Shown: positions 1 through 34,341 of the stretch, piece by piece | Position numbering within the stretch: position 1 is the first letter of the stretch | How the letters are laid out: the number at the start of each line of letters is the position of its first letter | Assembly (NCBI GenBank): GCA_965240325.2 | Contig: OZ251223.1 | Location: forward strand, 1,302,001 to 1,366,000 | Direction: 5' to 3' | Source: Rebecca billardiae RCC1528 | Taxonomy: Eukaryota > Protista > Haptophyta | Length of the DNA stretch: 64,000 nt | Notes under the pieces: model-generated | The model's database searches: none | What the model was told of the DNA's origin: nothing | Seen by the model: the letters and a program-made list of their open reading frames with translations, nothing else | Position numbers and translations under genes: made by a program

Positions 1-1560
1 CGAGCCAGCCCGCCGCGACGCACTCGAACTGCGTGCTCAGCGCCTCGCCCGCCGCCGGCCGCACCGCGAGCCCGCCCCCGTACGGCGGTAGGTTCACACG
101 CACGCGCACGGCCGCGCGCGCCTCGCGCGAGGCAGAGCCTCGCACCGTGAGCTCGAAGACGTACGTCTCGCCGCCAGAGAGCGCGCCCGGGCGGAAGGCG
201 AGCGTGGGCAGGGCCGCGCCCGTCGTCGTCACACCGCCCGCGTCTTCCAGCTCGAGCCCGGCCGCACGCCGCACGCCGCCCGCGCCGAGCGTGTACGCAC
301 GCCATTCGAACGAAAACGCTTCATCGCCGCGCGCGGCGCGCGCGCGCGAGGCGGTGTCCAGTCTCGCCTGTAGGACGACTCGTCCCGAGCTGGGCGCGAG
401 CGCGTCCCAGTCCGGGTTGGAGACGGCGCCGCCGAGGGGCGCGAGCGAGAGCCTGGGCAGCGGCAGCCCGCCCGTCCCGTTCACCACCTCCACCGCCACC
501 GAGGTGCGCGCGTTCGGCAGGTCCGGCGCGCTCAGCGTGGCACCGACCATGTACCAGCCTGCGCCGAGCGCGCCGGCCGGGAGGCGGAGCACGGCCGACG
601 CGGCGAGCGAGCCGTTGGGCAGCGCGAGCGGCGGCCCCACCGCCGCGGGCGCGCCGCCGCCGCCCGCGGGCGCGCTCGCGACCCGCACGTCCCACGCCCA
701 GCGCAGGTGCGAGCCTGCCGGCACCGACGCGGCGGGCGGCATGTTCGGGTCGTGCGAGGCCGAGGCATCGAGCTCGAGCGGCGCGGACGCGTCGACGCGG
801 CGGTCGCCGCCGGCGAGGAGGAGGACGAGCGGCAGCGTGCGCACGACGAGCACGCACCGCGCCTCCGCCGCCGCCGCGCCCGCCGCCGCCTCCGCCATCG
901 CCGCGGCCACGCCCAGCTCGTACCGGCGGCCGGCGCGCAGCGCGTGCGCAGGCAGCGACAGCGCCGCGCCGCGCGCGCTCGGCGCCGGCAGCTCGGGCCA
1001 CGGCTCCGCGGCGGTGTCGTTGAGCGGCGCGCCCGCCGCGTCGAAGACGCCGCGCAGGGTCCACGCGAACGCCACGCGCGCGCCCCCCGCCCAGCACGGC
1101 GCGAGGCTCGCGCGCGCCAGCAGCGTCGTGCGCGCGTCCGGCCTCACCGCGCGCTCGGCCGGGCCGTCGATGTCGACGGTCGGCGGCGCGCCCGGCGCGC
1201 GCGCGACGGTGACAAAGGCGGGTGCGGACCAAGCGGACGCGCCGAGCGGCGCGGCGGCGGGGTCGGCGCCCGGCTCGGCCAGCGCGTCGAAGCTCGCGCG
1301 CACGCGCATCGCAAACGTGTACCCGGCCGAGCCCGCGGGCGACGCGGCGGGCAGCCCTCGCACCGTGGGCGCGGCGGTTGTCAGCGGCAGCGATCGCAGC
1401 GCGGCGTCGATCTGCGCAGCGCCCTCTGCGTCCGAGAGTGCGCGCGCGAGACGCCACTCGTACTGCAGGCCGAACGCGCCGCCGCCGCCACTCGAGCCGC
1501 TGCCGTCGAGCGCGACGCTCTCACCCGGGCACGACGACACCGTGCGCGGCGCGCGCAGCT
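1..1560 (-). other. PKD/REJ-like (polycystin-1 type) region of the giant protein, truncated by the window edge
   Basis: Manual translation: VALDGSGSSG..LQYEW, LELDASASHDPN..LRWAW, LAFRPGALSGGETYVFELTV, VNLPPYGG.L.V.P..G.AL.T.F..W, typical of REJ domains. Confidence 0.72.
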
Positions 1561-4500
1561 CAGGCACGAGCTCCGGGCACGCGCCGAGCGCGCCGCACGG
1601 CGCGTCTGCGTCGATGGCCACTGTGGAGCTGTTGAGACGGAGCGTGGCGCAGAGGGCGGGGGCGGAGGCGCACTCCGCGGGGCGCACCGCGCCCGCGCGC
1701 ACGCCGACCACGTCGCCAGGCCGCACCGCCGCGCCCGCGCCCAGCCGCACCGCGAGCGTCGACGCGTCCGGCCAGTAGCACGCGGCCGAGGCGGCGGCGC
1801 CCGCGCGCGCGGGGTCGGCGTCGGCGTCGGCAGCGACGAGCGCGAGAGTGCGCGCGTCAAGCACCGCGGCGCAGTCGCCCACGCCGCCGCCCATGCCGGC
1901 GCGGTCGGTCTCGCGCCCCGCGTCGAAGCGGAGCAGCAGCAGCTCCACGCCCGCCGCGCGCAGCCCGCCGCCGTCCCCCGAGCTGCCCGCGACGAAACTC
2001 GCCCCCTCGAGCACCGGCGCGTGAGGGCCGTCCGTGAGCTCAAAGTACACGGCCCCCGGCCCGCCGCGCCGCGCGGGCGCGAACTGCTGGCCGTTGAGCG
2101 AGACAAGGAGCTGCGCCGGGCCGGGAGGGCCGTGCGGCGCGCGCACCACCGCCCAGTCCCCGCCCGGGCTCAGCTCGAGCGGCGCGGCCGCCGCGTGCTC
2201 CCGGCCGAACGCGAAGGCGAGCAAATGGCCCAGCCCGGCCGAGGCCAGCTCGGCAAAGCCCGAGCCGTACACCGTCACGCTCGTGTGCAGCGCCGGGCCG
2301 GCCGCGGGGACCACGGCCGTCACGTTGGGCGGCGCGTACGCGCGGAAGGGCGCCGCCGACGCGCTGCGCCCGAGCAGGCCCGCGCCGGCGGCGGACGTGC
2401 CGTTGCCGCCCGCCGTGCCGTTCGTGCCGTTGGCCGCGCCCGCGCCGCCGTCGCCGGCCGCGGCGGCGGCGGCCATGCTGGCCTCGGACCAGATCGCAAT
2501 CTCGACGCTCAGCGCGCCGGGCGCGCCGAGCGCGGGCAGGGTGCACGCGGCGCGGCTCGTGCCGTTGCGCGGCGGCAGCACCGTCGCGCCCGCCGCGCAC
2601 CCCGCGCCCAGCGCCGGCAGCACGCAGCACAGCGACAGCCCACGCCCGGCCAGCAGCCCGCGGTCCCAGCCTTGCCCCTCAAGGGTGACGACGGTGCCGC
2701 CGCCCACCGGGCCGGCGGCGGGGCCGAGCGCGCGCACGGCGAGCGCGGACGGGTCGAAGACGCGAAGCACGGGCGCGCCGAACAGCGTCGGCGCCGCGCG
2801 CGCCTCGCCGCCGCCCGCGCCGCCCAGCCACAGCGCCAGCGCGTACGAGCCCTCGCCCAACCCGCCGGCCAGCTCGCAGCTCGCCGACCCGTCCGAGAGC
2901 ACCGCCGCGGCCGAGGTGGCGGCGGGCGCGAGGCCGGCGAGGATCTCGTCGTCGGACGGCGCGGCGCCGCCGGGCGCGGCGGCGTACAGTGCGCAGTACG
3001 AGCGGCCCGCGCCCACCGCACGGCCGAAGCCCACGCCGCTCAGTGTGAGCACGCGCGCAGACGCGCCGCCGCCACCGTCCGCACTGCCGCCCGCCGCCGC
3101 GCCGCCCAGGGGCACGGCGCCGGGCTCGGCCGAGAGCAGCAGCGAGCTGAAGGAGGCCCAGGGCGGGAACGACGGCGGCGGCGCGAGCGGGGGCGGCGCG
3201 GGCGGAGGCGGCGGCGAGGGCGGCGGCGAGGGCGGCAGCGAGGGCGGCGGGCTGGGTGGCGGGCTCGGCGGTGACGCCGGCGGAAAGCTCGGCGGTGGTG
3301 ACGGTGGTGGCGACGGTGGAGGGCTCGGGGGCGGAAACGGCGGTGGGCTGGGCGGCGGGCTCGGCGGAGGGCTTGGCGGAGGGCTCGGTGGCGGCGGAGA
3401 CGGCGGCGGCGACGGTGGTGGTGATGGTGGCGGCGAAGGCGGCGGCGCGGGCGGCGGGCTCGCCGGCGGGCTCGGCGGTGGGCTCGGCGGCGGCGATGGC
3501 GGCGGGCTTGGCGGTGGCTGCAACGGAGGCGGGCTCGGCGGCGGGCTTGGTGGCGGCGCCGGTGGCGGGCTCGGCGGCGGCGATGGCGGCGGCGGGGATG
3601 GCGGCGGGCTTGGCGGCGGCGATGGCGGCGGCAAAGGTGGCGGGCTCGGAGGCGGACTTGGCGGCGGCAGTGGCGGCAAACGCGGCGGGGGCGAGGGCGG
3701 CGGCGAGGGCGGCGGATTCGGCGGCGGGCTCGGCGGTAGCAATGGCGGCGGGCTCGGCGGAGGCGAGGGCGGCGGCGATGGCGGGGGAACCGGCGGCGGG
3801 CTCGGTGGCGGGCTCGGTGGCGGGCTCGGTGGTGGGCTCGGCGGTGACGGCGGCGTGAATGGCTCCATGCGCGGCGGCGGCGGCGGCATCGGCGGTGGCG
3901 CGGGTGGCGGTGCCGGCGGCGGGGAGGGCGGGGGGCTCGGCGGGGGCGCCGGCGACACAGCGGGCGGCGGGCTTGGCGGCGGCGATGGCGGGGGCACAGG
4001 CGGCGGGTTCGGTGGTGGCGATGGTGGTGGCACCGGCAGTGGGCTCGGCGGTGGGCTCGGCGGGGGTGACGGCGGTGGGCTGGGCGGCGGGATCGGCGGC
4101 GGGATCGGCGGTGGACTTGGCGGCGGCAACGGCGGCGAAGGCGGCGGAGGCGAAGGCGGCGTCGACGGTGGCGGGCTGGGCGGCGGGCTGGGCGGCGGGC
4201 TGGGCGGCGGGCTCGGCGGAGGCGACGGTGGCGGCGATGGCGGGGGAACCGGCGGCGGGCTCGGTGGCGGGCTCGGTGGCGGGCTCGGTGGTGGGCTCGG
4301 CGGTGACGGCGGCGTGAATGGCTCCATGCGCGGCGGCGGCGGCGGCATCGGCGGTGGCGCGGGTGGCGGTGCCGGCGGCGGGGAGGGCGGGGGGCTCGGC
4401 GGGGGCGCCGGCGACACAGTGGGCGGCGGGCTTGGCGGCGATGATGGCGGCGGGCTTGGCGGCGGCATTGGGGGTGGGCTCGGCGGCGGCAAAGGGGGCA

Positions 4501-7500
4501 GGCCGGGCGGCGGGCTCGGCGGCGGGCCGGGCGGCGGGGACGGCGGCGGGCTCGGCCGTGGGCTCGGCGGTGGGCTCGGCGGCGGCGACGGTGGTGGGTT
4601 AGGTGCCGCATCTGGCGGCGGGCTGGGTGGTGGGCGTGGCTGTGGCGGGCTGGGCGGTGGACTGCCCGGCGGCGGGCTCGGCGGCGGGCTCGGCGGTGGG
4701 CTCGGCGGCGGACTGGGCGGCGGAGATGGGTGCGGGCTCGGCGGTGGCGATGGCGGCGGGCGAGGCGGCGGCGTGGGCGGCGATGATGGCGGCGGGCTTG
4801 GCGGCAGCATTGGGGGTGGGCTCGGCGGCGGCAAAGGGGGCGATCCGGGCGGCGGCGACGGCGGCGGGCTCGGCGGCGGGCTCGGCGGCGGGCTCGGCGG
4901 CAAAGACGGCGGTGGGGTCGGTGGCGGCGAAGGTGGCGGAAGTGGCGGTGGACTGGGCGGGTGTGATGGCGGTGGGCTCGGGGGCGGGCTCGGCGGCGCC
5001 GGCGGTGGGAGTGGCTGCGTGCGCGGCGGCGGCGGGGGCGCATGCGGGCTCGGCGGCGGGCTTGGCGGCGGCGAGGGCGGCGGCGCGGGCGGCGGAGACG
5101 GTGGCGAGCTAGGTGGCGCGCCAGGAGGGAAGCTGGGTGGTGGCCTGGGCGGAGGTGGTGGCGGCGAAGTCGGAGTTGGGCTGGGCGGCGGCGACGGCGG
5201 TGGTAGAGGCGGAGGCGACGGCGGGGCCGACGGTGGCGGCGAAGGTGGTGGCGAGGGCGGAGGTGGGCTTGGGGGCGGGCGAGGTGGTGGCAATGGCGGA
5301 GAGCTGGGCGGCGGGGAAGGCGGTGGGCTTGGCGGCGGCGAGGGCGGTGGCGAAGGTGGCGGCGACGGCGCTGGGCTCGGCGGCGGGCTCGGCGGAGGGC
5401 TCGGCGGCGGGCTGGGCGGCGGCGGGCTGGGCGGTGGCGATGGTGGCGGCGAGGGCGGCGGTCCCGGCGGCGGCGAGGGCGGTGGGCTCGGCGGCGCGGC
5501 CGGCGGTGGGCTCGGCGGCGAGCTCGGCGGCGGAGGCGACGGCGGTGGACTGGGTGGCGGCGCGGGCGGCGGGCTCGGCGGCGGCGACGGCGGCAAGCCG
5601 GGCGGCGGCGACGGTGGCGGCGACGGCGGTGGCGTGGGTGGCAGCGAGGGCGGCGGGCTGGGTGGCGGCGATGGCGGCGGCAACGGTGGCGGTGGACTGG
5701 GCGGCGGGCTGGGTGGAGGCGACGGCGGTGGTGATGGGGGCGGCAAGGGTTGCGGCGGGCTCGGCGGGGGCGAGGGCGGAGGCAAAGGCAGCGGGCTCGG
5801 CGGTGGGTTTGGCGGCAGTGACGGCGGCGGGCTCGGCGGAGGTGACGGCGGTGGGATTGGCGGCGGGCTGGGCGGCGGCCTGGGCGGTGGCAAAGGTGGC
5901 GGCCTGGGCGGTGGCGGGCTCGGCGGCGGGCTGGGCGGCGGTGCCGGCGGTGGGCTTGGGGGCGGCGAGGGCGGCGGCATGGGCGGCGGGCTCGGTGGCG
6001 GCCCCGGCGGTGGGCTGGGCGGCGGCGACGGTGGCGGCGCGGGCGGTGGGCTGGGCGGCGGACTTGGCGGTGGTGGGCTTGGCGGCGGGCTCGGGGGTAG
6101 CGAGGGCGGTGGTGAGGGTGGTGGCGATGGCGGCGGGCTCGGTGGGGGGCTCGGAGGCAGCGATGGCGGCGGCGATGGCGGCGGGCTGGGCGGTAGAACG
6201 GGCGGTGGAGACGGAGGTGGAGACGGCGGCGGCGTTGGCGGCGGCGTTGGCGGTGGCGAGGGCGGCGGGCTTGGCGGGGGCGGACTCGGCGGCGGGGTTG
6301 GTGGTGGGCTCGGCGGTGGCGCGGGCGGCGGGCCGGGCGGCGGGCTGGGCGGCGGGCCGGGCGGCGGCGAGGGCGGCGTCGTCGGTGGCGGGCTTGGTGG
6401 CGGGCTCGGCGGCGGCGAGGGCGGTGGGCTCGGCGGTGGCGAGGGCGGCGGCGATGGCGGCGGGCTGGGCGGTGGCAAGGGGGGCGGGCTGGGCGGCGGT
6501 GAGGGTGGCGGGATAGGCGGCGGCGACGGCGGCGGCGATGGTGGTGGCGACGGCGGTTGTGAGGGCGGCGGGCTCGGCGGCGGGCTCGGCGGCGGGTTCG
6601 GCGGCGGGCTCGGCGGCGGCGACGGGGGTGGCGCCGGCGGCGGGCTCGGCGGTGGGCTCGGCGGCGGCGAGGGCGGAGGGCTTGGCGGCGGACTCGGTGG
6701 CGGCGGCGAGGGTGGCGGTGAGGGCGGCGGGCTCGGCGGCGGCAAGGGCGGTGGCGCAGGCGGCGGGCTGGGTGGCGGGCTGGGTGGAGGCGATGGCGGG
6801 GTCGACGGTGGCGGGCTGGGCGGCGGGGATGGCGGCGGGGACGGAGGCGGCGGCGAGGGTGGCGGCGAGGGCGGCGGCGCAGGCGGCGGGCTCGGCGGCG
6901 GGCTCGGCGGTGGCGGCAAGGGCGGAGGCGACGGCGGCGGGCTTGGCGGCGGGCGTGGCGGTGGCGACGGCGGCGGCGGCGACGGCGGGGGCGACGGCGG
7001 CGGAGACGGCGGCGGGCTTGGCGGCGGACTGGGCGGCGGCGGGGAGGGTGGCGGCGACGGAGGCGGGCTGGGCGGTGGCGACGGCGGCGGGCTCGGCGGC
7101 GTGCTCGGCGGTGGGCTCGGCGGCGGCAAGGGCGGTGGCGGTGACGGCGGAGGGGACGGCGGCGGGCTCGGCGGCGGGCTTGGCGGCGATGTCGGCGGCG
7201 GCGACGGCGGTGGGCTCGGCGGTGGGCTCGGCGGCGGAGAGGGCGGCGGGCTGGGCGGAGGTGATGGCGGCGGTGCTGGAGGTCGGCTTGGCGGCGGACT
7301 TGGCGGTGGAGATGGCGGCGGCGATGGCGGCGGCGACGGTGGCGGGCTGGGCGGTGGGCTGGGCGGCGGTGGCGATGGCGGCGGGCTCGGCGGCGGGCTC
7401 GGCGGCGGGCTCGGCGGCGGGCTCGGCGGCGGAGACGGCGGCGGGCTCGGCGGCGGGCTCGGTGGCGGCGGAGATGGCGGCGGCGACGGTGGTGGTGATG

Positions 7501-10500
7501 GTGGCGGCGATGGCGGCGGCGCGGGCGGCGGGCTCGGCGGCGGGCTCGGCGGCGGGCTCGGCGGCGGTGACGGTGGCGGTGACGGCGGCGGCGAGGGTGG
7601 AGGGCTCGGGGGCGGGCTCGGCGGCGGCGATGGCGGAGGGCTGGGCGGTGGGCTGGGGGGCGGAGGCGACGGCGGCGGGCTGGGTGGCGGGCTGGGCGGC
7701 GGGCTGGGCGGTGGCGATGGCGGCGGGTCGGGCGGCGGGCTGGGCGGCGGCGAAGGTGGCGGCGACGGTGGTGGCGACGGTGGCGGGCTCGGCGGCGGGC
7801 TCGGCGGTGGGCTCGGCGGCGGGCTCGGTGGTGGGCTCGGTGGTGGGCTGGGCGGGGGCGGCGACGGCGGCGGGCTGGGCGGCGGGCTCGGTGGCGGCGA
7901 GGGCGGCGGCGCCGGCGGCGGGCTGGGCGGCGGTGAGGGCGGAGGCAAAGGCGGTGGCGACGGCGGCGGGGACGGCGGTGGCGACGGTGGAGGCGACGGA
8001 GGCGGCGATGGCGGGGGACTGGGCGGTGGGCTGGGCGGTGGGCTGGGCGGCGGTGGAGACGGCGGCGGGCTGGGCGGTGGGCTCGGCGGCGGGCTTGGCG
8101 GAGGCAGCGGCGGTGGACTTGGCGGTGGGCTGGGCGGCGGCGACGGTGGCGGCGACGGTGGTGGCGACGGCGGCGGGCTCGGCGGTGGCGACGGCGGCGG
8201 GCTCGGCGGTGGGCTCGGCGGCGGGCTCGGCGGTGGGCTGGGCGGGGGTGGCGACGGCGGCGGAGACGGCGGTGGGCTTGGTGGCGGCGATGGCGGCGGC
8301 GCGGGCGGCGGGCTCGGCGGCGGCGAGGGCGGCGGCGAAGGCGGTGGCAACGGTGGCGGTGACGGCGGCGGTGACGGCGGCGGGCTCGGGGGCGGGCTCG
8401 GCGGCGGCGATGGCGGAGGGCTGGGCGGTGGGCTGGGTGGCGGTGGCGACGGTGGCGGGCTGGGAGGCGGACTTGGTGGCGGGCTGGGCGGTGGCGATGG
8501 CGGTGGGCTGGGCGGCGGGCTCGGCGGCGGCGACGGTGGCGGCGACGGTGGCGGCGACGGTGGTGGCGACGGTGGCGGGCTCGGCGGCGGGCTCGGCGGC
8601 GGGCTTGGAGGTGGTCTTGGTGGAGGGCTTGGCGGCGGCGGAGACGGTGGCGGCGACGGTGGTGGTGACGGTGGCGGCGATGGCGGCGGCGCAGGCGGTG
8701 GGCTCGGCGGCGGGCTCGGCGGCGGGCTCGGCGGCGGAGACGGCGGCGGAGACGGCGGCGGCGACGGTGGTGGGCTTGGTGGCGGACTCGGTGGCGGCGA
8801 TGGCGGAGGGCTGGGAGGTGGGCTGGGGGGCGGAGGCGACGGCGGCGGCGACGGCGGCGGACTCGGTGGCGGGCTGGGTGGTGGCAATGGCGGCGGGCTC
8901 GGCGGCTGGCTTGGCGGCGGCGACGGTGGCGGCGACGGTGGTGGCGATGGCGGCGGGCTCGGAGGCGGGCTCGGCGGTGGGATCGGCGGCGGGCTCGGAG
9001 GTGGGCTTGGTGGAGGGCTTGGCGGCGGCGGAGATGGCGGCGGCGACGGTGGTGGTGACGGTGGCGGCGATGGCGGCGGCGCCGGCGGTGGGCTCGGCGG
9101 CGGGCTCGGCGGCGGGCTCGGCGGCGGAGATGGCGGCGGCGACGGTGGCGGCGACGGTGGTGGGCTCGGTGGCGGGCTCGGTGGCGGCGAGGGTGGAGGG
9201 CTGGGCGGTGGGCTGGGTGGCGGGGGCGACGGCGGCGGGCTGGGCGGCGGGCTGGGCGGCGGGCTGGGCGGCGGCGACGGTGGCGGGCTGGGCGGTGGAC
9301 TGGGCGGTGGCGACGGTGGCGGCGACGGCGGCGGGCTGGGCGGCGGGCTGGGCGGCGGCGAAGGTGGCGGCAACGGCGGCGGGCTCGGCGGCGGGCTCGG
9401 CGGCGGGCTCGGCGGCGGGCTCGGCGGCGGGCTCGGAGGTGGGCTCGGTGGGGGGCTGGGCGGGGGCGGCGACGGCGGTGGAGACGGCGGCGGGCTCGGT
9501 GGTGGCGAGGGCGGTGGCGCCGGGGGAGGCTTGGGTGGCGGCGAGGGCGGAGGCAAAGGCGGTGGCGACGGTGGCGGGGACGGCGGTGGCGACGGTGGTG
9601 GCGACGGAGGCGGCGATGGCGGTGGACTGGGCGGTGGGCTGGGCGGTGGGCTCGGTGGCGGCGGTGACGGGGGCGGGCTGGGCGGTGGGCTCGGCGGCGG
9701 GCTTGGTGGAGGCAACGGCGGCGGGCTTGGCGGCGGGCTCGGCGGCGGGCTCGGCGGCGGCGACGGTGGAGGCGATGGCGGCGGGCTCGGCGGCGGAGAT
9801 GGCGGTGGGCTCGGCGGAGGGCTCGGCGGAGGGCTCGGCGGAGGGCTCGGCGGTGGCGGAGATGGCGGCGGAGACGGTGGTGGTGACGGTGGCGGCGATG
9901 GCGGCGGCGCGGGCGGCGGGCTCGGCGGCGGACTCGGCGGCGGGCTCGGCGGCGGGCTCGGCGGCGGTGACGGCGGCGGTGACGGCGGCGGGCTCGGGGG
10001 CGGGCTCGGCGGCGGCGATGGCGGAGGGCTGGGCGGTGGGCTGGGAGGCGGAGGCGAGGGGGGCGGGCTCGGCGGCGGGCTAGGCGGCGGGCTGGGCGGT
10101 GGCGATGGAGGCGGGCTGGGCGGCGGGCTCGGCGGCGGCGAAGGTGGCGGCGACGGTGGTGGCGACGGCGGCGGGCTCGGCGGTGGGCTCGGCGGTGGGC
10201 TCGGCGGTGGGCTCGGCGGCGGGCTCGGCGGTGGGCTGGGCGGGGGTGGCGACGGCGGCGGAGACGGCGGCGGGCTTGGTGGCGGCGAGGGCGGCGGCGC
10301 TGGCGGCGGGCTGGGCGGCGGCGAGGGCGGAGGCGAAGGCGGTGGCGACGGCGGCGGGGACGGCGGTGGCGACGGTGGCGGCGACGGCGGAGGTGATGGC
10401 GGTGGACTGGGTGGTGGGCTGGGCGGTGGGCTCGGTGGCGGCGGTGACGGGGGCGGGCTGGGCGGTGGGCTCGGCGGCGGACTGGGCGGCGGCGACGGCG

Positions 10501-25500: not shown

Positions 25501-28500
25501 TGGTGGCGACGGTGGCGGCGAGGGCGGCGGCATCGGGGGCGGGCTGGGAGGCGGCGAGGGTGGTGGCGACGGCGGCGGCGATGGCGGCGGGGACGGCGGC
25601 GGCGAGGGCGGTGGCGACGGCGGTGGCGATGGCGGCGGGGATGGCGGTGGGGACGGCGGCGGGCTCGGCGGCGGGCTGGGCGGTGGCGAGGGCGGAGGGC
25701 TGGGCGGCGGGCTGGGCGGCGGCGGCGACGGAGGCGGGCTGGGAGGCGGACTCGGCGGCGGGCTGGGCGGCGGCGACGGCGGCGGGCTGGGTGGCGGGCT
25801 CGGCGGCGGGCTCGGAGGAGGCGACGGTGGCGGCGATGGCGGGGGGCTTGGTGGCGGAGACGGCGGCGGGCTCGGCGGTGGGCTCGGCGGCGGGCTCGGC
25901 GGTGGGCTCGGCGGCGGTGGCGACGGTGGCGGCGACGGTGGTGGCGACGGTGGCGGCGAGGGCGGCGGGCTGGGCGGCGGGCTGGGCGGCGGCGACGGCG
26001 GTGGCGACGGTGGCGGCGAGGGCGGCGGGGACGGCGGTGGCGACGGTGGAGGCGACGGCGGCGGGCTTGGCGGTGGGCTCGGCGGTGGGCTCGGTGGTGG
26101 GCTGGGCGGCGGCGGCGACGGCGGAGGGCTGGGTGGCGGGCTCGGCGGCGGGCTGGGCGGCGGCCACGGAGGCGGGCTGGGTGGCGGGCTCGGCGGCGGC
26201 GACGGTGGCGGCGACGGTGGCGGCGATGGCGGTGGACTCGGTGGTGGGGACGGCGGCGGGCTCGGCGGCGGGCTCGGCGGCGGGCTCGGCGGCGGGCTCG
26301 GGGGCGGTGGCGACGGTGGCGGCGACGGCGGTGGCGACGGTGGCGGTGAGGGCGGCGGGCTGGGCGGCGGGCTGGGCGGCGGGGACGGCGGTGGAGACGG
26401 TGGCGGCGAGGGCGGCGGGGACGGCGGTGGCGACGGTGGAGGCGACGGCGGCGGGCTTGGCGGTGGGCTCGGCGGTGGGCTCGGTGGTGGGCTGGGCGGC
26501 GGCGGCGAAGGCGGAGGGCTGGGTGGCGGGCTCGGCGGCGGGCTGGGCGGCGGCGACGGAGGCGGGCTGGGTGGCGGGCTTGGCGGCGGCGACGGTGGCG
26601 GCGATGGTGGCGGCGATGGCGGCGGACTCGGTGGTGGCGACGGCGGCGGGCTCGGCGGCGGGCTTGGTGGCGGGCTCGGCGGCGGGCTCGGCGGTGGTGG
26701 CGACGGTGGTGGCGACGGTGGTGGCGACGGTGGCGGCGAGGGTGGCGGCGCCGGCGGCGGGCTGGGCGGCGGCGAGGGCGGTGGCGACGGCGGCGGCGAG
26801 GGTGGCGGGGACGGCGGTGGCGACGGTGGAGGCGACGGCGGAGGCGATGGTGGTGGACTGGGCGGTGGGCTCGGCGGTGGGCTGGGTGGCGGGGGTGACG
26901 GAGGCGGGCTGGGCGGTGGACTAGGCGGCGGGCTCGGCGGTGGAGACGGAGGCGGGCTGGGCGGTGGACTAGGCGGCGGGCTCGGCGGTGGAGACGGAGG
27001 CGGGCTGGGTGGCGGGCTCGGCGGGGGGCTAGGGGGAGGCGACGGTGGGGGCGACGGCGGCGGGCTCGGTGGCGGCGACGGCGGCGGGCTCGGCGGTGGG
27101 CTCGGCGGCGGGCTCGGCGGTGGGCTCGGCGGCGGCGGAGATGGCGGCGGCGATGGTGGTGGCGACGGTGGCGGCGAGGGCGGCGGCGTCGGAGGTGGGC
27201 TTGGCGGCGGGCTGGGTGGCGGAGACGGTGGCGGCGATGGCGGTGGCGACGGCGGCGGTGACGGCGGCGGGCTTGGAGGCGGGCTTGGAGGCGGCGAGGG
27301 CGGAGGGCTGGGCGGTGGGCTGGGCGGCGGCGGCGAGGGTGGCGGGCTGGGAGGCGGGCTCGGCGGAGGGCTCGGCGGCGGTGACGGCGGCGGTGAGGGT
27401 GGCGGGCTTGGCGGCGGGCTTGGCGGCGGCGACGGCGGCGGCGATGGTGGCGGGCTCGGCGGTGGGCTCGGCGGTGGAGACGGCGGCGGGCTCGGCGGTG
27501 GGCTCGGTGGTGGGCTCGGCGGAGGCGGCGACGGCGGCGGAGACGGCGGCGGAGACGGTGGTGGCGAGGGCGGCGGCGCCGGCGGCGGGCTTGGCGGCGG
27601 CGAGGGCGGCGGAGACGGCGGCGGCGAAGGCGGCGGAGACGGCGGTGGCGACGGTGGAGGCGACGGCGGAGGGAATGGTGGTGGACTGGGAGGCGGGCTC
27701 GGCGGCGGGCTCGGCGGCGGGCTTGGAGGCGGCGAGGGCGGAGGGCTGGGCGGTGGGCTGGGCGGCGGCGGCGACGGCGGCGGGCTGGGCGGCGGGCTGG
27801 GCGGCGGGCTCGGCGGCGGCGATGGCGGTGGTGAGGGTGGCGGGCTCGGCGGCGGGCTTGGCGGCGGCGATGGCGGCGGCGATGGTGGCGGGCTCGGCGG
27901 TGGGCTCGGCGGTGGAGACGGCGGTGGGCTTGGCGGTGGGCTCGGTGGTGGGCTCGGAGGAGGCGGCGAGGGCGGCGGAGACGGCGGCGGAGACGGTGGC
28001 GGCGAGGGCGGCGGCGCCGGCGGCGGGCTTGGCGGCGGCGAGGGCGGTGGCGAGGGCGGCGGCGAGGGCGGCGGGGACGGCGGTGGCGACGGTGGAGGCG
28101 ACGGCGGCGGGCTTGGCGGTGGGCTCGGCGGCGGGCTGGGCGGTGGGCTGGGTGGCGGGGGCGACGGAGGCGGGCTGGGCGGTGGGCTCGGCGGCGGGCT
28201 CGGCGGTGGGGACGGCGGCGGGCTGGGTGGCGGGCTTGGCGGCGGGCTGGGGGGAGGCGACGGTGGGGGCGACGGCGGGGGGCTCGGTGGGGGAGACGGC
28301 GGCGGGCTCGGCGGTGGGCTCGGCGGTGGGCTCGGCGGCGGGCTTGGCGGCGGTGGCGACGGCGGCGGCGACGGTGGTGGTGATGGTGGCGGCGAGGGCG
28401 GCGGTGCCGGCGGCGGGCTCGGCGGCGGGCTCGGCGGCGGTGACGGGGGCGGTGACGGCGGCGGTGACGGCGGCGGTGACGGCGGCGGGCTCGGCGGCGG

Positions 28501-31500
28501 GCTTGGCGGCGGCGATGGCGGAGGGCTGGGGGGTGGGCTGGGTGGCGGAGGCGACGGCGGCGGGCTGGGAGGCGGGCTCGGCGGCGGGCTAGGCGGTGGC
28601 GAAGGTGGCGGGCTCGGCGGTGGGCTCGGCGGCGGAGACGGCGGCGGGCTCGGCGGTGGGCTCGGCGGTGGGCTTGGCGGTGGGCTTGGCGGAGGCGGTG
28701 AGGGCGGTGGCGACGGTGGTGGCGATGGTGGTGGCGAGGGCGGGGGCGCCGGGGGCGGGCTCGGCGGCGGGCTCGGTGGCGGCGACGGTGGCGGTGATGG
28801 CGGCGGTGACGGCGGCGGTGAAGGCGGCGGGCTTGGCGGTGGAGACGGCGGTGGAGACGGCGGCGGGCTCGGTGGCGGGCTGGGTGGTGGGCTTGGCGGC
28901 GGGGACGGCGGTGGGCTCGGCGGTGGGCTGGGTGGTGGCGGCGAAGGAGGCGGGCTGGGCGGTGGACTAGGCGGCGGGCTGGGAGGTGGGCTGGGCGGCG
29001 GCGAAGGCGGCGGGCTCGGCGGCGGCGAAGGCGGCGGCGACGGTGGCGGCGACGGTGGCGGGCTCGGCGGAGGGCTCGGCGGCGGGCTCGGCGGCGGGCT
29101 CGGCGGTGGGCTCGGCGGCGGGCTCGGTGGCGGAGGCGACGGTGGAGGCGACGGTGGTGGCGATGGTGGCGGCGAGGGCGGCGGCGCCGGCGGCGGGCTC
29201 GGCGGCGGGCTCGGCGGCGGTGACGGTGGCGGTGACGGCGGCGGTGACGGCGGCGGTGACGGCGGCGGGCTCGGCGGCGGGCTGGGCGGCGGCGATGGCG
29301 GGGGGCTGGGCGGTGGGCTGGGTGGCGGAGGCGACGGCGGCGGGCTGGGAGGCGGGCTCGGCGGCGGGCTCGGCGGTGGGGACGGCGGCGGGCTGGGTGG
29401 CGGGCTTGGCGGCGGGCTGGGCGGAGGCGACGGTGGGGGCGACGGCGGGGGGCTCGGTGGGGGAGACGGCGGCGGGCTCGGCGGCGGGCTCGGCGGTGGG
29501 CTCGGCGGCGGGCTCGGTGGCGGAGGCGACGGTGGAGGCGACGGTGGTGGCGATGGTGGCGGCGAGGGCGGCGGCGCCGGCGGCGGGCTCGGCGGCGGGC
29601 TCGGCGGCGGTGACGGTGGCGGTGACGGCGGCGGTGACGGCGGCGGTGACGGCGGCGGGCTCGGCGGCGGGCTAGGCGGCGGCGATGGCGGAGGGCTGGG
29701 CGGTGGGCTGGGTGGCGGAGGCGACGGCGGCGGGCTGGGAGGCGGGCTCGGCGGCGGGCTCGGCGGTGGCGAAGGCGGCGGACTGGGCGGCGGGCTCGGC
29801 GGCGGCGACGGCGGCGGCGACGGTGGCGGCGATGGCGGCGGGCTCGGCGGCGGGCTTGGCGGCGGGCTCGGCGGTGGGCTTGGCGGCGGGCTGGGTGGCG
29901 GGCTAGGCGGAGGCGGTGAGGGCGGCGGCGACGGTGGTGGCGATGGTGGCGGCGAGGGCGGGGGCGCCGGGGGAGGGCTCGGCGGGGGGCTCGGTGGCGG
30001 CGACGGTGGCGGTGATGGCGGCGGTGACGGCGGCGGTGACGGCGGCGGGCTTGGCGGTGGGTTTGGCGGTGGAGACGGCGGCGGGCTCGGTGGCGGGCTC
30101 GGCGGCGGGCTCGGCGGCGGCGAAGGCGGGGGGCTGGGCGGGGGGCTGGGTGGCGGCGGCGAAGGAGGCGGGCTGGGCGGCGGGCTGGGCGGCGGGCTGG
30201 GTGGTGGGCTCGGCGGTGGGCTCGGCGGTGGGCTCGGCGGTGGGCTTGGTGGGGGCGAAGGCGGCGGCGGGCTTGGCGGCGGCGACGGCGGCGGCGATGG
30301 TGGCGGGCTCGGCGGTGGGCTCGGCGGTGGGCTTGGCGGAGGCGACGGCGGCGGGCTTGGCGGTGGGCTCGGCGGCGGTGGACTCGGGGGCGGGCTGGGC
30401 GGCGGGCTGGGCGGCGGGCTGGGCGGCGGGCTGGGCGGCGGGCTCGGCGGCGGCGATGGTGGCGGGCTCGGCGGCGGGCTCGGCGGTGGCGGGCTCGGCG
30501 GCGGGCTAGGTGGGGGGCTGGGCGGTGGCGACGGCGGCGGCGACGGCGGCGGGCTCGGCGGTGGGCTCGGAGGCGGCGAGGGTGGCGGGCTGGGTGGCGG
30601 CGGGCTTGGAGGCGGCGAGGGCGGCGGCGAGGGCGGTGGGGATGGCGGTGGCACCGGCGGGGGCGCCGGTGGCGGCGAGGGCGGGGGGCTCGGCGGCGGA
30701 CTGGGCGGTGGGCTCGGTGGTGGAGACGGCGGTGGCGACGGCGGCGGGCTGGGGGGTGGCGGGCTGGGCGGCGGGGACGGCGGCGGGGACGGCGGCGGGC
30801 TGGGCGGCGGCGCGGGCGGCGGGCTCGGCGGTGGTGATGGTGGCGGAGAGGGCGGCGGGCTGGGCGGAGGGCTGGGCGGCGGCGAGGGCGGCGGCGAGGG
30901 CGGCGGGCTCGGCGGCGGCGGGCTGGGCGGCGGGCTGGGCGGCGGCGAGGGCGGCGGCGAAGGCGGCGGCGAGGGCGGCGGGAAGGGCGGCGGGCTGGGC
31001 GGCGGGCTGGGCGGCGGCGACGGTGGCGGGCTTGGGGGTGGTGACGGTGGTGGCGAGGGCGGCGGGCTGGGCGGCGGCGGGCTGGGCGGCGGGCTCGGGG
31101 GCGGCGAGGGAGGAGGCGAGGGCGGCGGCGAGGGCGGCGGTCGCGGCGGCGGCGACGGTGGCGGGCTCGGCGGTGGGCTGGGCGGCGGGCTGGGCGGCGG
31201 GCTCGGCGGTGGCGACGGCGGGGGGCTTGGCGGCGGCGGACTGGGCGGTGGGCTGGGCGGCGGCGAGGGCGGTGGCGAGGGCGGCGGCGAGGGCGGTGGC
31301 GAGGGCGGCGGCGAAGGTGGCGGGCTCGGTGGCGGGCTGGGCGGCGGCGGGCTCGGCGGGGGCGACGGAGGCGGCGAGGGCGGCGGGCTGGGCGGAGGGC
31401 TGGGCGGCGGGCTCGGCGGCGGCGAGGGCGGCGGCGAGGGCGGAGGGAATGGTGGCGGCGGGCTCGGCGGCGGGCTTGGCGGCGGCGACGGCGGCGGGCT

Positions 31501-34241
31501 CGGCGGCGGGCTCGGCGGCGGGCTCGGCGGCGGGCTCGGCGGCGGGCTCGGCGGAGGGCTTGGCGGCGGTGGGCTGGGCGGTGGACTTGGCGGTGGGCTC
31601 GGCGGCGGTGAGGGCGGCGGTGAGGGCGGCGGCGGGCTCGGCGGCGGGCTCGGCGGTGGCGAGGGTGGCGGCGAGGGCGGCGGGCTGGGGGGCGGGATGG
31701 GCGGCGGTGACGGCGGCGGCGACGGTGGTGGGCTCGGCGGCGGCGACGGTGGTGGTGATGGTGGCGGGCTCGGCGGGGGCGGGCTCGGCGGCGGTGAGGG
31801 TGGCGGCGAGGGCGGCGGGCTCGGCGGCGGCGAGGGCGGCGGACTCGGCGACGGGCTGGGCGGCGGCGAGGGGGGCGGGCTCGGCGGCGGGCTCGGCGGG
31901 GGCGAGGGTGGCGGGCTGGGCGGCGGAGGGCTGGGCGGCGGGCGCGGCGGCGGGCTTGGCGGCGGGCTCGGCGGTGGGCGCGGCGGTGGCGGGCTGGGCG
32001 GCGGGCTGGGCGGTGGGCCGGGCGGCGGGCTCGGCGGGGGCGACGGCGGTGGGGACGGCGGCGGTGTGGGCGGTGGGGGGCTGGGCGGCGGCGGGCTGGG
32101 CGGCGGCCGCGGGGGCGGAGGGCTCGGGGGCGGGCTCGGCGGCGGCGACGGCGGCGACGGATTCGGCACGGGTGCGGCGGGCAGGTTGTCGCCCATCGTC
32201 GCCGAGTCCGCGCCTCGGTTCGATGTGTCCCCCGTGCCGAGCTGGCCGCTGTCACCGACGCCGAAGCTGCGAGCCGCGCGGCGCCGCGCGGCAAGGGGCG
32301 TCGGATTGCGCGGCGCGGGGCGCGGCAGGCGGCGCGCGTGGCGCGCATCTGCCGCATGTGCCCGCGCACCCACCGCGCGCAGCACCCACGCAGCACCCGC
32401 GCCGCGCACCATTTGAGAGACTCGTCGTCGAGCGTGACGCAGTTGAAGTCCCCGCCCGTGCTCAGATCGACGACTGTGCGGCCTGAGCCCAGCTGCACGG
32501 CCAGCAGTGCGTCCCCCATGTCCTCCGCGTCGCGGCCACGGTTGGAGCCGTCGCCCGCGCCGTTCTGACCCGACGGGCCGAAGCCCCAGCTGCGCAGCGG
32601 CAGCGCCGGGCACGCGCGCGCGCGCACGGCGGCGCGACGCGGCGCGGCGCGGGGCAACGCCGCGCAGATTCGCGCGAGCGGCGGCGGCGGAGGCTTGAGC
32701 GAGGAGCGGGCGGGGGTGTGTTGCGAGGGCGGCCCGGCGGGCGCGCGGCGCGCGGCGGTGGCGCGCGCGCACCACTTGAGCTGCCCGTCCGTCAGCTTCG
32801 CGCACGTCTGCCGCTCACCGAGCGAGAGGAACTCAGCGGTCAGCCCTGTGCCGAGGTTGAAGCCGGCCTCGCCGGCGGGGTTCGTGATGTCGGTGTTCGT
32901 GTCCATGCCGAGCCGGCCGTAGTCGTCCTGCCCCCAGCACTTGATCACGTCGGGGCTCGTGAGCCGCGAGCACGTGTGCTCCACGCCCACCGCCACGTCG
33001 AGCGGCGTGCCCCCCGTGTTCACACTCGGCAGCCCGTCGCCCATCGAGCCGCCCGTCTTACCATAGTCGGTCTTCGAGCCGATCCCGAGCTGGCCGCCGT
33101 TGTTCCGGCCCCAGCTGCGCGATGGCAGGGCGCGGTCGTGGGGCGCGGGGCGTGAGCGCGCATGCGCCGGGCGCGCGGGCCCGCCGCGCGAGCCCGCCGC
33201 GCGCGCGCACCACTTCAGCGTGCTGTCCGTGAAGAGCACACAGCCATGCCTGCCCAGGTGAACGTCCCAGCTAGTGCCAACTGTCAGCCCGGACCCGAAC
33301 GAGAGCTGGCCGCCCGCGGTGTTGGAGGAGGCGGTGCTCTCGCTGCCGAGCTCGCCGCCGTCGCCGCGGCCGAAGCACTGGATCCCGACGGTGCCGCTGA
33401 TCGTCGAGCGCACGCACGTGTGCTGCGAGCCGCAGCGCACCTCGTGCGCGGTGGCGCCCGCGCCCAGGCTGACTGCCACGAGAGCGTTGCCCATGGCGCG
33501 CGCACCGCCCGCGCCGCTGCCCGTTTCCGTGTTGTCGCCGCTGCCCAGCTGGCCGTACGCGTTGTCGCCCCAACTGCGGCGCGCACACGCGAGCCCACGC
33601 CGCCGATCACGCGGCGGGTCGGCAGGCGGACGTCAGGCCGAGAGCGCACGGCCGCACAGCACCGCGCGAGTAGGCGCAGGGGGGCATCCGGCGGCGAGCG
33701 GGTGCGCGCAGAGGCACGCGGCGGGGGCAAATGGCAGCCGCCCGGCGTGCAGTGGGGCGAGCACGCGGGTAAGCCTGCCACGCACCATCTGACGGTACCG
33801 TCTGACAGCACGACGCACGTGTGCACTCCGCCCGAGCTGAGGTCCGTCACTGTGGTGCTGTCGGGCACAGACACGTACGGCAGGTTGAGGCCGAGCTCGC
33901 CGGGCTCGTCACCTCTCGCCTCGGTGTCCTCGTACCCGAGGCGGCCGTCGTTGCCGTTGCCAAAGCTGCGCGTCGCGCGCGCACAGCAGGTGCGCGCGTG
34001 GCCGCGGGTCGGCGCGCTCCGCTCCACGGGTTGCGTGCACGCGCAGGGGCGTCATCTCGCACGGCCGCGCGGGGGCGCACCATTTGACCTCGCCCCCAGA
34101 ATACAGCGCGCAGGTGTGCGAGGTACCCGACGCAAGCTGAGTGATGGTACTCGCGCCAGCCACGCTCGCAAACACTCCCGGGTGAATCGCCGGGGTGACG
34201 AGCGCGAGGATCGTGCCACCGAGGGCCAGGGTGGCGGCCAT
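1..34241 (-). CDS. Giant secreted/surface protein, 3'-partial: signal peptide + 7 RCC1 repeats + about 9,650-aa (SPPP)n rod + IPT/TIG domains + PKD/REJ-like region. Exons: 34241-34081, 33965-33786, 33573-33211, 33114-32773, 32589-32410, 32266-<1, with 1-nt indels near 23435 and 22970
   Basis: ATG at 34241 gives MAATLALGGTILALVTPAIHPGVFAS. Five GT-AG introns join RCC1 motifs (SHTCAL..EVKCFGNGNDGRLG, TVRCWGDNAYGQLG, LKCWGRNNGGQLG, LKCFGVGDSGQLG). The SPPP frame continues into GPAAGPVGGGTVVTLEGQGW and PPNVTAVVPAAGP..VTVYGSGF..VSLNGQQF (IPT-like), then GGDRRVDASAPLELDASASHDPN and VNLPPYGGGLAVRPAAGEALSTQFECVAAGW (REJ-like). The track lists no stop-terminated minus ORF in this frame below 22970, consistent with an open frame to the window edge. 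Confidence 0.88.
2030..3150 (-). other. Two to three IPT/TIG-like Ig-fold domains of the giant protein
   Basis: Motifs VLTLSGVGF, P.AGPVGGGTVVTLEGQGW and PPNVTAVVPAAGP..SVTVYGSGF..LLVSLNGQQF. Confidence 0.65.
3770..4440. repeat. Internal duplication with 459-bp offset in the degenerate C-terminal end of the rod
   Basis: GTGAATGGCTCCATGCGC...GGCGACACAG occurs at 3855 and 4314. Confidence 0.85.
15230..16800. repeat. 534-bp higher-order repeat (178 aa), 3 copies
   Basis: GGGAAAGGC marker with AAA at 15645, 16179 and 16713. Confidence 0.85.
20990..26330. repeat. 828-bp higher-order repeat (276 aa), about 6 near-identical copies inside the SPPP array
   Basis: Marker CATCGGGGGCGGGCTGGGAGG at 21389, 22217, 23046, 23875, 24703 and 25531; spacings 828, 829, 829, 828, 828. 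Confidence 0.92.
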
Positions 34242-34341
34242 GGCCAAACTGCCCCCCTCTCACGACCCAGGTCACGACCTGGGCACCTCTGATGAAGGCC
34301 TGTTGCCTGCCGGCTGCCGCCAAAACTCGATACACTGGATC

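What the first reader, a model, noticed from the sequence alone, without database searches (positions are those of the whole stretch)
1..34241. An 11,000+ aa protein: RCC1 propeller on a micrometre-scale polyproline rod, ending in an IPT + polycystin-REJ base
Seen: one spliced frame with signal peptide, 7 RCC1 blades, about 9,650 residues of SPPP, IPT/TIG domains and a REJ-like module, with no stop before the window edge. The last exon appears to be at least 32 kb. Known: SPPP arrays are extensin/HRGP-type hydroxyproline O-glycosylation substrates forming polyproline-II rods (about 0.31 nm per residue). REJ modules usually precede GPS/TM regions in polycystin-1-like receptors. Green-algal agglutinins and mastigoneme core proteins use head-on-shaft designs. 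Inference: a single chain about 3 micrometres long that holds a binding propeller far from the membrane, acting as a flagellar hair, tether or long-range mechano/contact sensor. RCC1 propellers are normally intracellular, and I do not recognise this domain combination.
Basis: partly seen in the sequence, partly recalled or inferred. Interest (0 to 1): 0.93.

Follow-up and report, generated by a model that had tools for sequence, protein, structure and literature searches.

The report
Giant stalked polycystin-like surface protein gene
A very GC-rich alga, probably a pavlovophyte haptophyte, has one gene that appears to encode a protein of over 11,000 residues: a binding propeller, a Ser-Pro-Pro-Pro rod of about 3 micrometres, and a polycystin-1-type base; the design resembles the Chlamydomonas flagellar-hair core protein but is far longer, and it is not yet shown to be expressed.

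Summary
The observation mostly holds. The gene is on the minus strand. It has an ATG and a signal-like segment at 34241. Five phase-2 introns (GTGCG...CAG) each split the Cys codon of the RCC1 "KCWG" motif. Splicing gives a 7-blade RCC1-like head that runs in frame into about 9,670 residues of SPPP/SPPPP (32163-3161). Three IPT/TIG-like domains, a conserved Cys-rich module and a REJ domain follow (Pfam E 1.9e-14), open to base 1.

One correction: the frame is not continuous. Two single extra G's, at 23434 and 22968, shift it. Each is unique to one copy within a run of otherwise identical 828-bp higher-order repeats, so consensus error is the likeliest cause, but this is unproven.

The nearest relatives (about 40% identity) include Diacronema lutheri and Pavlovales sp. 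proteins, and paralogues from this organism's own reads. They continue as GPS (conserved H-L-T), about five hydrophobic segments and an EF-hand pair. No channel domain was detected.

The closest functional analogue is Chlamydomonas MST3/Mstax. I read this as the longest member of a lineage-specific family of stalked, polycystin-1-like receptors or tethers. The scan has already noted many such genes elsewhere in this genome. There is no RNA evidence, and the C-terminus lies outside the window.

The parts
34081..34241 (-). Exon 1: start codon, hydrophobic signal-like N-terminus, and the first RCC1 blade up to the K-C split codon
   Evidence: An in-frame stop lies just upstream of the ATG. The donor is GTGCG. 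RCC1_2 hit. The N-terminal pattern is conserved in paralogue L004.
33786..33965 (-). Exon 2: one RCC1 blade
33211..33573 (-). Exon 3: two RCC1 blades
   Evidence: About 69% identical to paralogue P0161.
32773..33114 (-). Exon 4: two RCC1 blades
   Evidence: Pfam RCC1 scores 29.3 bits against a cut-off of 21.7. UVR8 is the best solved match at E 5e-14.
32410..32589 (-). Exon 5: one RCC1 blade
   Evidence: Splice sites and the C[WF]G motif. This piece alone gave no Pfam hit.
32164..32266 (-). Start of exon 6: end of the seventh blade and its junction to the rod
   Evidence: The same junction is seen in paralogue L004.
3161..32163 (-). Ser-Pro3 array of about 9,670 residues, read in three frame segments (32163-23435, 23434-22969, 22968-3161)
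23434..23434 (-). First +1 frame break: an extra G on the + strand inside a G run
   Evidence: It is the only difference from the identical 828-bp copies. Read-derived contigs lack it, but this is ambiguous.
22968..22968 (-). Second +1 frame break: an extra G on the + strand inside a G run
21746..25887 (-). Five tandem 828-bp (276-aa) higher-order repeat copies with 0-4 mismatches. This is the least secure part of the assembly.
2036..3160 (-). Linker and three IPT/TIG-like beta-sandwich domains, with a Gly/Ala/Asn-rich N-glycosylation patch
   Evidence: The Pfam TIG hit lies at 2737-2666. These domains align to the TIG region of relatives. The AF2 model shows beta domains. NxS/T sites are listed.
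1526..2023 (-). Conserved Cys-rich module between TIG and REJ, with no Pfam name
   Evidence: Invariant Cys, Trp and Thr columns occur across 16 relatives.
1..1525 (-). PKD-like/REJ region. The Pfam REJ hit covers about 922-5 and is cut by the window edge at profile position 340 of 452.

Best explanation
I read this as one gene for a protein of at least 11,160 residues, probably about 12,300 once the missing tail is added.

Shown:
- A 7-blade RCC1-like propeller sits behind a signal-like N-terminus.
- About 9,670 residues of Ser-Pro3 follow, kept at the peptide level. The array has no Tyr and no Cys.
- Next come three IPT/TIG-like domains, a conserved Cys-rich module and a REJ domain.

Inferred from relatives, including paralogues in this organism's own reads:
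- The tail beyond the window holds a GPS autoproteolysis motif (H-L-T), about five membrane segments and, in most relatives, a cytosolic EF-hand pair. No channel domain is present.

Inferred from established HRGP and MST3 knowledge:
- The prolines are hydroxylated and O-glycosylated, which would give an extended polyproline-II rod of up to about 3 micrometres. That is on the order of the cell's own size.
- The propeller sits at the distal tip.

Proposed mechanism:
- The head binds a ligand or surface.
- Tension travels along the stiff glycosylated rod to the REJ/GPS module. As in polycystin-1 and adhesion GPCRs, this module is a force-sensitive, cleaved junction coupled to Ca2+-linked signalling.
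- Even without signalling the molecule would act as a long membrane-anchored tether or hair.

The two frame breaks are most likely consensus errors inside identical repeats. The gene looks like the longest member of a lineage-specific family in which a short Pro linker between a variable head and a TIG-REJ-GPS base has been expanded by tandem duplication.
For: - Gene model and head.
- Array size and peptide-level constraint: the two Ser codon families and 93-99% canonical units on both sides of the breaks.
- Base: Pfam REJ and TIG. 352 relatives, the best at E 5e-86 and about 41% identity over query residues 243-1029. The AF2 model best matches PKD1L1 (E 8e-23), suREJ and PKDREJ. Conserved Cys residues and 9 NxS/T sites fit an ectodomain.
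- Tail inferred from relatives: TIG-REJ-GPS-EF-hand, hydrophobic segments in a 1+2+2 pattern, and invariant H-L-T. P0008 and P0012 come from run ERR14847148, which also holds this window's own MFS gene.
- Head-to-rod junction repeated in a paralogue contig of the same run.
- Expanded-linker idea: a D. lutheri relative has a C-type lectin head and a Pro-rich (SPP-type) linker of about 25 aa before TIG.
- Frame breaks: each is one extra G, unique to one of three otherwise identical 828-bp copies.
- Precedent for a head, Hyp rod and polycystin-type anchor: MST3/Mstax.
Against: - As assembled, the frame is broken twice, and the literal ORF never reaches the base.
- The read evidence at the two sites is ambiguous, because the version lacking the extra base also occurs exactly in neighbouring copies.
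- No RNA run was listed, so splicing, expression and head-base linkage are untested.
- GPS, TM and EF-hand lie outside the window and could not be fetched.
- The AF2 model of a relative's membrane part was too poor to classify, at pLDDT 53.
- Hydroxylation and glycosylation in this lineage rest only on a literature hint that haptophytes have ExAD-like GT47 genes.
- The repeat copy number is unverified.
Confidence: 0.6

Rival explanations
1. It is a purely structural fibre: a flagellar hair core, cell-coat or mucilage fibril anchored in the membrane. In this reading it is like the MST3/Mstax axis of the Chlamydomonas mastigoneme, possibly sheathed by another protein, and has no sensing role.
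For: MST3 has the same N-terminus-distal head, Hyp rod and polycystin-type anchor. The array has no Tyr or Cys, so it would be a free rod rather than a cross-linked wall. From memory, Pavlovales carry fine non-tubular hairs on the long flagellum. The scan's notes list other giant SPPP proteins in this genome.
Against: Relatives keep a GPS cleavage motif and cytosolic EF-hands, which suggests signalling. The uniform SPPP lacks the MST3-specific repeat that docks MST1. No localisation data exist.
Confidence: 0.25
2. The frame breaks are real. The locus would then be a recently broken gene, or it would make a secreted RCC1-SPPP protein whose tail is out-of-frame Arg/His-rich sequence, unconnected to the TIG-REJ base.
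For: The assembly shows both extra bases. All three frames of the array lack stops, so a shifted product would still be long.
Against: Each extra G is the sole difference from identical neighbouring 828-bp copies and lies in a homopolymer. SPPP purity is 96-97% immediately after the breaks. The 1,050 downstream non-repeat codons stay open in the SPPP frame while the other two frames there hold stops, and they keep family-conserved residues.
Confidence: 0.15
3. The gene is real, but the assembly mis-sizes the array through collapse or expansion of near-identical higher-order repeats. The 3-micrometre figure would then be wrong.
For: Five 828-bp copies differ by 0-4 bases, and other 390/438/1218-bp periodicities are present. 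The available read contigs are tiny and cover little of the array.
Against: About 86% of the array lies outside the five near-identical 828-bp copies and is diverged at the DNA level, with about 71-75% unit-to-unit identity. That makes it assemblable with long reads. The suspect block is only about 4.1 kb.
Confidence: 0.2
4. It is a gamete-recognition or agglutinin-type adhesion molecule used in mating rather than in general sensing.
For: REJ-GPS proteins act in sperm-egg recognition in sea urchins, and an Ectocarpus male-gamete candidate has REJ plus GPS. From memory, Chlamydomonas sexual agglutinins are head-on-Hyp-shaft proteins.
Against: The family is large and has many head types in this genome and in D. 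lutheri, which fits broader roles. There are no expression data.
Confidence: 0.1

Closest known systems
Chlamydomonas reinhardtii MST3 / Mstax, and the seven other Pro-rich 'SIP-binder' proteins (PMC11015965; bioRxiv 10.1101/2024.12.24.630281)
   Same: A giant single chain (about 8,000 aa) with globular binding domains at the distal N-terminus. A very long hydroxyproline-type extended rod sets the length of the structure. A polycystin-family membrane anchor sits at the C-terminus.
   Different: The MST3 anchor is a partial PKD2-like channel fold completed by SIP. Here the base is REJ(-GPS), of polycystin-1 type, and relatives show no channel domain. MST3's stem uses a 64-residue Hyp11-(X2Hyp)n-Hyp12 repeat wrapped by MST1, whereas this rod is uniform SPPP. 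The head is an RCC1 propeller rather than lectins. The rod is about 4-5 times longer than the MST3 stem. The lineage is different (haptophyte-like). No sequence homology between the two was shown.
Polycystin-1 family (PKD1, PKD1L1, PKDREJ, sea-urchin suREJ; Ectocarpus Esi0130_0068)
   Same: A REJ domain is preceded by Ig-like domains, and the best fold matches fall in this family. Relatives have GPS with H-L-T directly before the first membrane segment.
   Different: Relatives show no PLAT and no PKD_channel hit. They have about 5 hydrophobic segments instead of 11, and an EF-hand pair between membrane segments. A 9,670-residue Pro rod lies between head and base.
Extensins and algal HRGPs (plant extensins, Chlamydomonas GP1, sexual agglutinins)
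   Same: Ser-Pro3-4 repeats, which are the classical substrate for prolyl hydroxylation and Hyp-O-arabinosylation/Ser-O-galactosylation. A head-on-shaft design.
   Different: There are no Tyr cross-linking motifs (0 Tyr in 9,669 aa). The rod is tens of times longer. It sits on a membrane receptor base and is found in a haptophyte-like genome.
Adhesion GPCRs (GAIN/GPS mechanosensors)
   Same: A long adhesive ectodomain is joined to the membrane part through an autoproteolytic GPS, and the accepted mechanism is force-dependent.
   Different: Relatives show no 7TM domain. The GPS of this gene itself has not been seen.
Secreted bacterial and archaeal RCC1-type propellers
   Same: These are the best full-length matches to the head (about 30% identity, E to 1e-60). 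They often occur with Ig-like, fn3 or He_PIG domains, i.e. in an extracellular context.
   Different: They are prokaryotic and have no Pro rod. The head here carries five spliceosomal introns.

Membership tests
Polycystin-1 / REJ family | REJ domain | tested here: met
   Pfam PF02010 at E 1.9e-14, 53.6 bits against a cut-off of 25, covering profile positions 55-340 and cut by the window edge. Fold matches to PKD1L1, suREJ and PKDREJ.
Polycystin-1 / REJ family | GPS/GAIN autoproteolysis site before the first TM | not testable with these tools
   It lies beyond base 1. It is present with an invariant H-L-T in relatives. Attempts to extend the contig failed.
Polycystin-1 / REJ family | PLAT domain and an 11-TM body with a channel-like C-terminal half | not testable with these tools
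   It lies outside the window. Relatives gave no PLAT or PKD_channel hit at E up to 5 and show about 5 hydrophobic segments. The AF2 model of a relative's membrane part was unreliable.
IPT/TIG domains | Ig-like beta-sandwich matching PF01833 | tested here: met
   26.7 bits against a cut-off of 20.9, but over only 24 residues. Three G-G-T-x-V-T-V-x-G-x-G-F-type motifs align with the TIG domains of relatives. The AF2 model shows beta domains.
RCC1-like 7-blade propeller | Seven RCC1 repeats | tested here: met
   Seven C[WF]G motifs at blade spacing in the spliced head. Pfam RCC1 is above the cut-off on exon 4 and below it on the other single-exon pieces. UVR8 and HERC are the best PDB hits. RCC1 proteins reach E 1e-60. 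The whole spliced head was not scanned or folded because it has no reference.
Extensin-type HRGP | Ser-(Pro)3-5 repeats | tested here: met
   1,996 SPPP and 145 SPPPP units.
Extensin-type HRGP | Tyr-containing cross-linking motifs | tested here: not met
   0 Tyr and 0 Cys in 9,669 residues.
Extensin-type HRGP | Prolyl hydroxylation and O-glycosylation | not testable with these tools
   Only a literature hint that haptophytes carry ExAD-like GT47 genes.
MST3/Mstax-type mastigoneme axis | Mstax-specific Hyp repeat, Hyp11-(X2Hyp)n-Hyp12 | tested here: not met
   The array is uniform SPPP/SPPPP. The repeat is defined in the paper read.
MST3/Mstax-type mastigoneme axis | Partial PKD2-like transmembrane domain completed by SIP | not testable with these tools
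   The tail is outside the window. Relatives show no PKD_channel hit.

The most novel reading that the evidence does not exclude
A single polypeptide forms a glycosylated polyproline-II 'whisker' of about 3 micrometres, on the order of the cell's own size, with a propeller sensor at its tip and a cleavable REJ-GPS, Ca2+-linked base. It would be the extreme member of a large, undescribed haptophyte family of stalked polycystin-1-like receptors. In that family, heads are swapped and stalk length is tuned by tandem repeat number, giving the cell long-range contact or mechanical sensing of particles, bacteria, mates or grazers.
Probability: 0.3. Interest if true: 0.8.

Novelty: new variant of a known kind. 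Interest (0 to 1): 0.6.

Why it matters
If real, this would be one of the longest single-chain extracellular rods known. It would also be a second, independent-looking case, outside green algae, of a binding head mounted on a hydroxyproline-type rod and anchored by a polycystin-family module. That bears on several questions:
- How polycystin-1-type REJ/GPS modules sense force.
- How repeat number sets the dimensions of cell-surface structures.
- What haptophyte flagellar hairs and cell coats are made of.

It also shows that gene callers break or miss such genes: public relatives start inside Pro stalks, and none of this gene's own protein was found in the public collections.

Tried and rejected
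1. **Green-alga origin.** I assumed this at first. All named best relatives are Pavlovales, and the high GC fits D. lutheri's 73%.
2. **Reads at the frame breaks.** Contigs of run X1 lack one base at exactly 22968 and 23434. The corrected sequence also occurs exactly in neighbouring repeat copies, so I do not count this as proof.
3. **Introns that could bypass the breaks.** The array contains no GTGCG-type donors, so I rejected this.
4. **RNA evidence.** No RNA run was listed.
5. **Extending leftwards.** An exact-pattern scan of metagenome contigs found nothing. A word-based search with the last 300 aa found nothing.
6. **RCC1 heads among the relatives.** None of the 152 REJ-family relatives fetched by then carries one. 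Only a same-organism paralogue contig does.
7. **UVR8-like UV-B sensing.** UVR8 is merely the nearest solved RCC1 fold. From memory, UVR8 relies on Trp-rich GWRHT-type motifs, and I saw none on reading the head. This was not tested formally.
8. **Membrane part of a D. lutheri relative.** The AF2 model had pLDDT 53 and was unusable.
9. **Plus-strand giant ORFs.** ORFs such as 2034..26924 are mirror artefacts of the composition.
10. **Whole spliced head.** I did not submit it to Pfam, structure prediction or homology search as one sequence, because it has no reference and I did not type it in.


Full report
**Where the gene is.** From about 3.2 to 32.2 kb the window is 82-86% G+C with a strong G excess on the + strand, so the coding strand is the minus strand. 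Mechanical ORF listing gives huge ORFs in several frames on both strands. This happens because the composition almost excludes stop codons, so ORF length alone means nothing here.

**Head.**
- On the minus strand, an ATG at 34241 follows an in-frame stop.
- Six exons can be joined through five introns of 115, 212, 96, 183 and 143 nt. All start GTGCG and end CAG. All split the Cys codon (TG|C or TG|T, phase 2) of the RCC1 'K-C-W/F-G' motif.
- The spliced product has seven C[WF]G motifs at blade spacing and runs in frame into the Pro-rich frame of exon 6.
- The exon pieces hit Pfam RCC1, RCC1_2 and WD40_RLD.
- One 113-aa exon matches UVR8 and HERC propellers in the PDB at E 5e-14.
- A stop-free read-through of exons 3-5 finds RCC1 proteins at up to E 1e-60. 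These are mostly bacterial secreted types carrying Ig-like, fn3 or He_PIG domains. Extracellular RCC1 propellers are therefore not unusual outside eukaryotes.
- The N-terminus is hydrophobic and signal-like, but I ran no predictor.

**Rod.**
- From 32163 to 3161 the Pro-rich frame encodes about 9,670 residues: 1,996 SPPP, 145 SPPPP, and a few hundred variant units.
- Units are only about 71-75% identical at the DNA level.
- Ser is written with both AGC (1,075) and TCN codons, and Pro with all four codons. It is the peptide that is conserved.
- Purity is 93-99% canonical units along the first roughly 7,800 residues and decays only in the last roughly 1,200 residues, next to the base.
- The array has no Tyr and no Cys, so it lacks extensin-type cross-linking motifs.
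- At 0.31 nm per residue (429 residues = 133 nm in PMC11015965), the rod would be about 3.0 micrometres if fully extended.

**Frame breaks.**
- The Pro-rich frame changes at 23434 and 22968. Read literally, the ORF that starts in the SPPP frame drifts into Arg/His/Ala sequence and ends at 3042, never reaching the base.
- Both breaks lie inside five tandem 828-bp higher-order copies (21746-25887) that differ by 0-4 bases. Three of these copies are identical except for one extra G each, and those two G's are the breaks.
- Read-derived contigs of the only listed run lack one base at exactly these two places. The same corrected sequence exists in the neighbouring copies, so this does not settle it.
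- No plausible donor sites occur in the array.
- SPPP purity is unchanged after the breaks.
- Over the 1,050 non-repeat codons downstream, the SPPP frame stays open while the other two frames there hold stops. Family-conserved residues are also kept there.
- I put about 75-80% on consensus error. The alternative is very recent mutation.

**Base.**
- After the array, 1,053 codons remain open to base 1.
- Pfam finds TIG (above cut-off, short) and REJ (E 1.9e-14). REJ is cut at the window edge, at profile position 340 of 452.
- An exhaustive search found 352 relatives. The best reach E 5e-86 at about 41% identity over query residues 243-1029.
- An alignment of 16 relatives shows three TIG-like motifs, a conserved Cys-rich module and the REJ region, with many invariant Cys, Trp and Gly.
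- The AF2 model (pLDDT 70.6) is a string of beta domains. Its best Swiss-Prot-AFDB matches are PKD1L1 (E 8e-23), suREJ and PKDREJ. PDB matches are generic Ig-like strings.
- Nine NxS/T sites and 16 Cys fit an ectodomain.

**What should follow beyond the window.**
- Every sufficiently long relative continues with the rest of REJ, then about 300 residues, then a GPS motif. A first hydrophobic segment sits about 45 residues after GPS, followed by two more, an EF-hand pair, and two further segments in the complete relatives.
- H-L-T of the GPS is invariant in nine relatives.
- No PLAT or PKD_channel hit appears at E up to 5. An AF2 model of one membrane part was too poor to use.
- By analogy, about 1,050-1,200 residues are missing, for a total of about 12,300. 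That fits in the roughly 9 kb before the next noted genes.
- I could not fetch that DNA.

**Organism and family.**
- All named top relatives are Pavlovales: Diacronema lutheri KAG8459354.1, KAG8462819.1 and KAG8463750.1, and Pavlovales sp. CCMP2436 KAJ1635852.1 and KAJ1633484.1. D. lutheri is 73% G+C. The organism is therefore probably a pavlovophyte haptophyte, though not one of those two strains.
- The window's own MFS gene is found only in run ERR14847148.
- The same run carries two rod-less TIG-REJ paralogues with five hydrophobic segments.
- It also carries a paralogous RCC1 head with the same N-terminus and the same intron positions, which runs into SPPSPPPSPP at the contig end.
- A D. 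lutheri relative has a C-type lectin head and a Pro-rich (SPP-type) linker of about 25 aa before TIG. Others have 115-165-aa Pro segments. The rod therefore looks like an expanded linker.
- The scan's own notes list 36 REJ/GPS and 57 SPPP-rod items in this genome, several with RCC1 heads. I treat these as leads, partly checked by the paralogue contigs.

**Comparison with the known.**
- The closest functional analogue is Chlamydomonas MST3/Mstax. It is about 8,000 aa with its N-terminus at the distal tip, lectin domains, a Hyp rod that sets mastigoneme length, and a PKD2-like anchor. Seven further Pro-rich partial-PKD2 proteins are described with it.
- The present gene shares that design. It differs in its base (REJ-GPS, polycystin-1 type, no channel detected), its repeat type, its head, its length and its lineage.
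- REJ-GPS proteins in algae have one precedent, an Ectocarpus male-gamete candidate.
- A full-text search for 'REJ domain' together with 'haptophyte' found no paper.
- I classify it as a new variant of a known kind.

**Mechanism, and what is inferred.**
- Shown: the domain order and the peptide-level conservation.
- Inferred: secretion; hydroxylation and glycosylation (literature hint); an extended rod; the GPS-TM-EF-hand tail; and force or ligand sensing through a cleaved REJ/GPS junction, by analogy with polycystin-1 and adhesion GPCRs.
- A passive hair or tether role is the main rival.
- Nothing here shows expression.

Noticed in passing
window 21746-25887: Five tandem 828-bp (276-aa) higher-order repeat copies with 0-4 mismatches. 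Elsewhere in the array the periods are 390, 438, 534 and 1218 bp. The array edge next to the base is the most diverged, as expected for an array that grows from its interior.
   Followed up: partly
L004:1-2187 (Logan contig of ERR14847148): A paralogous gene from the same organism's reads. It has the same signal-like N-terminus, an RCC1 head with introns at the same K-C-W-G positions, and it ends in SPPSPPPSPP at the contig end. It shows no DNA-level similarity to the window.
   Followed up: partly
window 32412-33572 (-): The best full-length matches to the RCC1 head are bacterial secreted RCC1 proteins from Myxococcota, Bdellovibrionota and various MAGs, at about 30% identity and E to 1e-60. 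Eukaryotic nuclear RCC1/HERC types score lower. This could be database bias or an old transfer. The head carries five spliceosomal introns.
   Followed up: no
window 32267-34080 (-): All five introns share GTGCG...GCAG ends, are 78-88% G+C, and sit at the same codon position of successive blades. This suggests either blade-plus-intron duplication or repeated intron gain at one motif.
   Followed up: no
window 2034-26924 (+) and other giant ORFs: ORFs of thousands of codons on the + strand and in the off-frames of the - strand are composition artefacts. One off-frame has no stop across the whole 29-kb array.
   Followed up: yes
window 53555-55246 (+): A single-ORF MFS/nodulin-like transporter gene of 563 aa. 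Its only match in the 5.8-billion-protein collection at E <= 1e-10 was its own copy from run ERR14847148, which shows how poorly sampled this lineage is.
   Followed up: partly
P0156 (D. lutheri KAG8463750.1), residues 1-700: The layout is signal peptide, C-type lectin head, a Pro-rich (SPP-type) linker of about 25 aa, then TIG-REJ-GPS. This is a short-linker version of the same architecture, and its head choice mirrors animal polycystin-1.
   Followed up: partly
window 34338-37934: Another note of the scan places a long-TIR element with an SPPP fragment just upstream of the start codon. I did not examine it.
   Followed up: no
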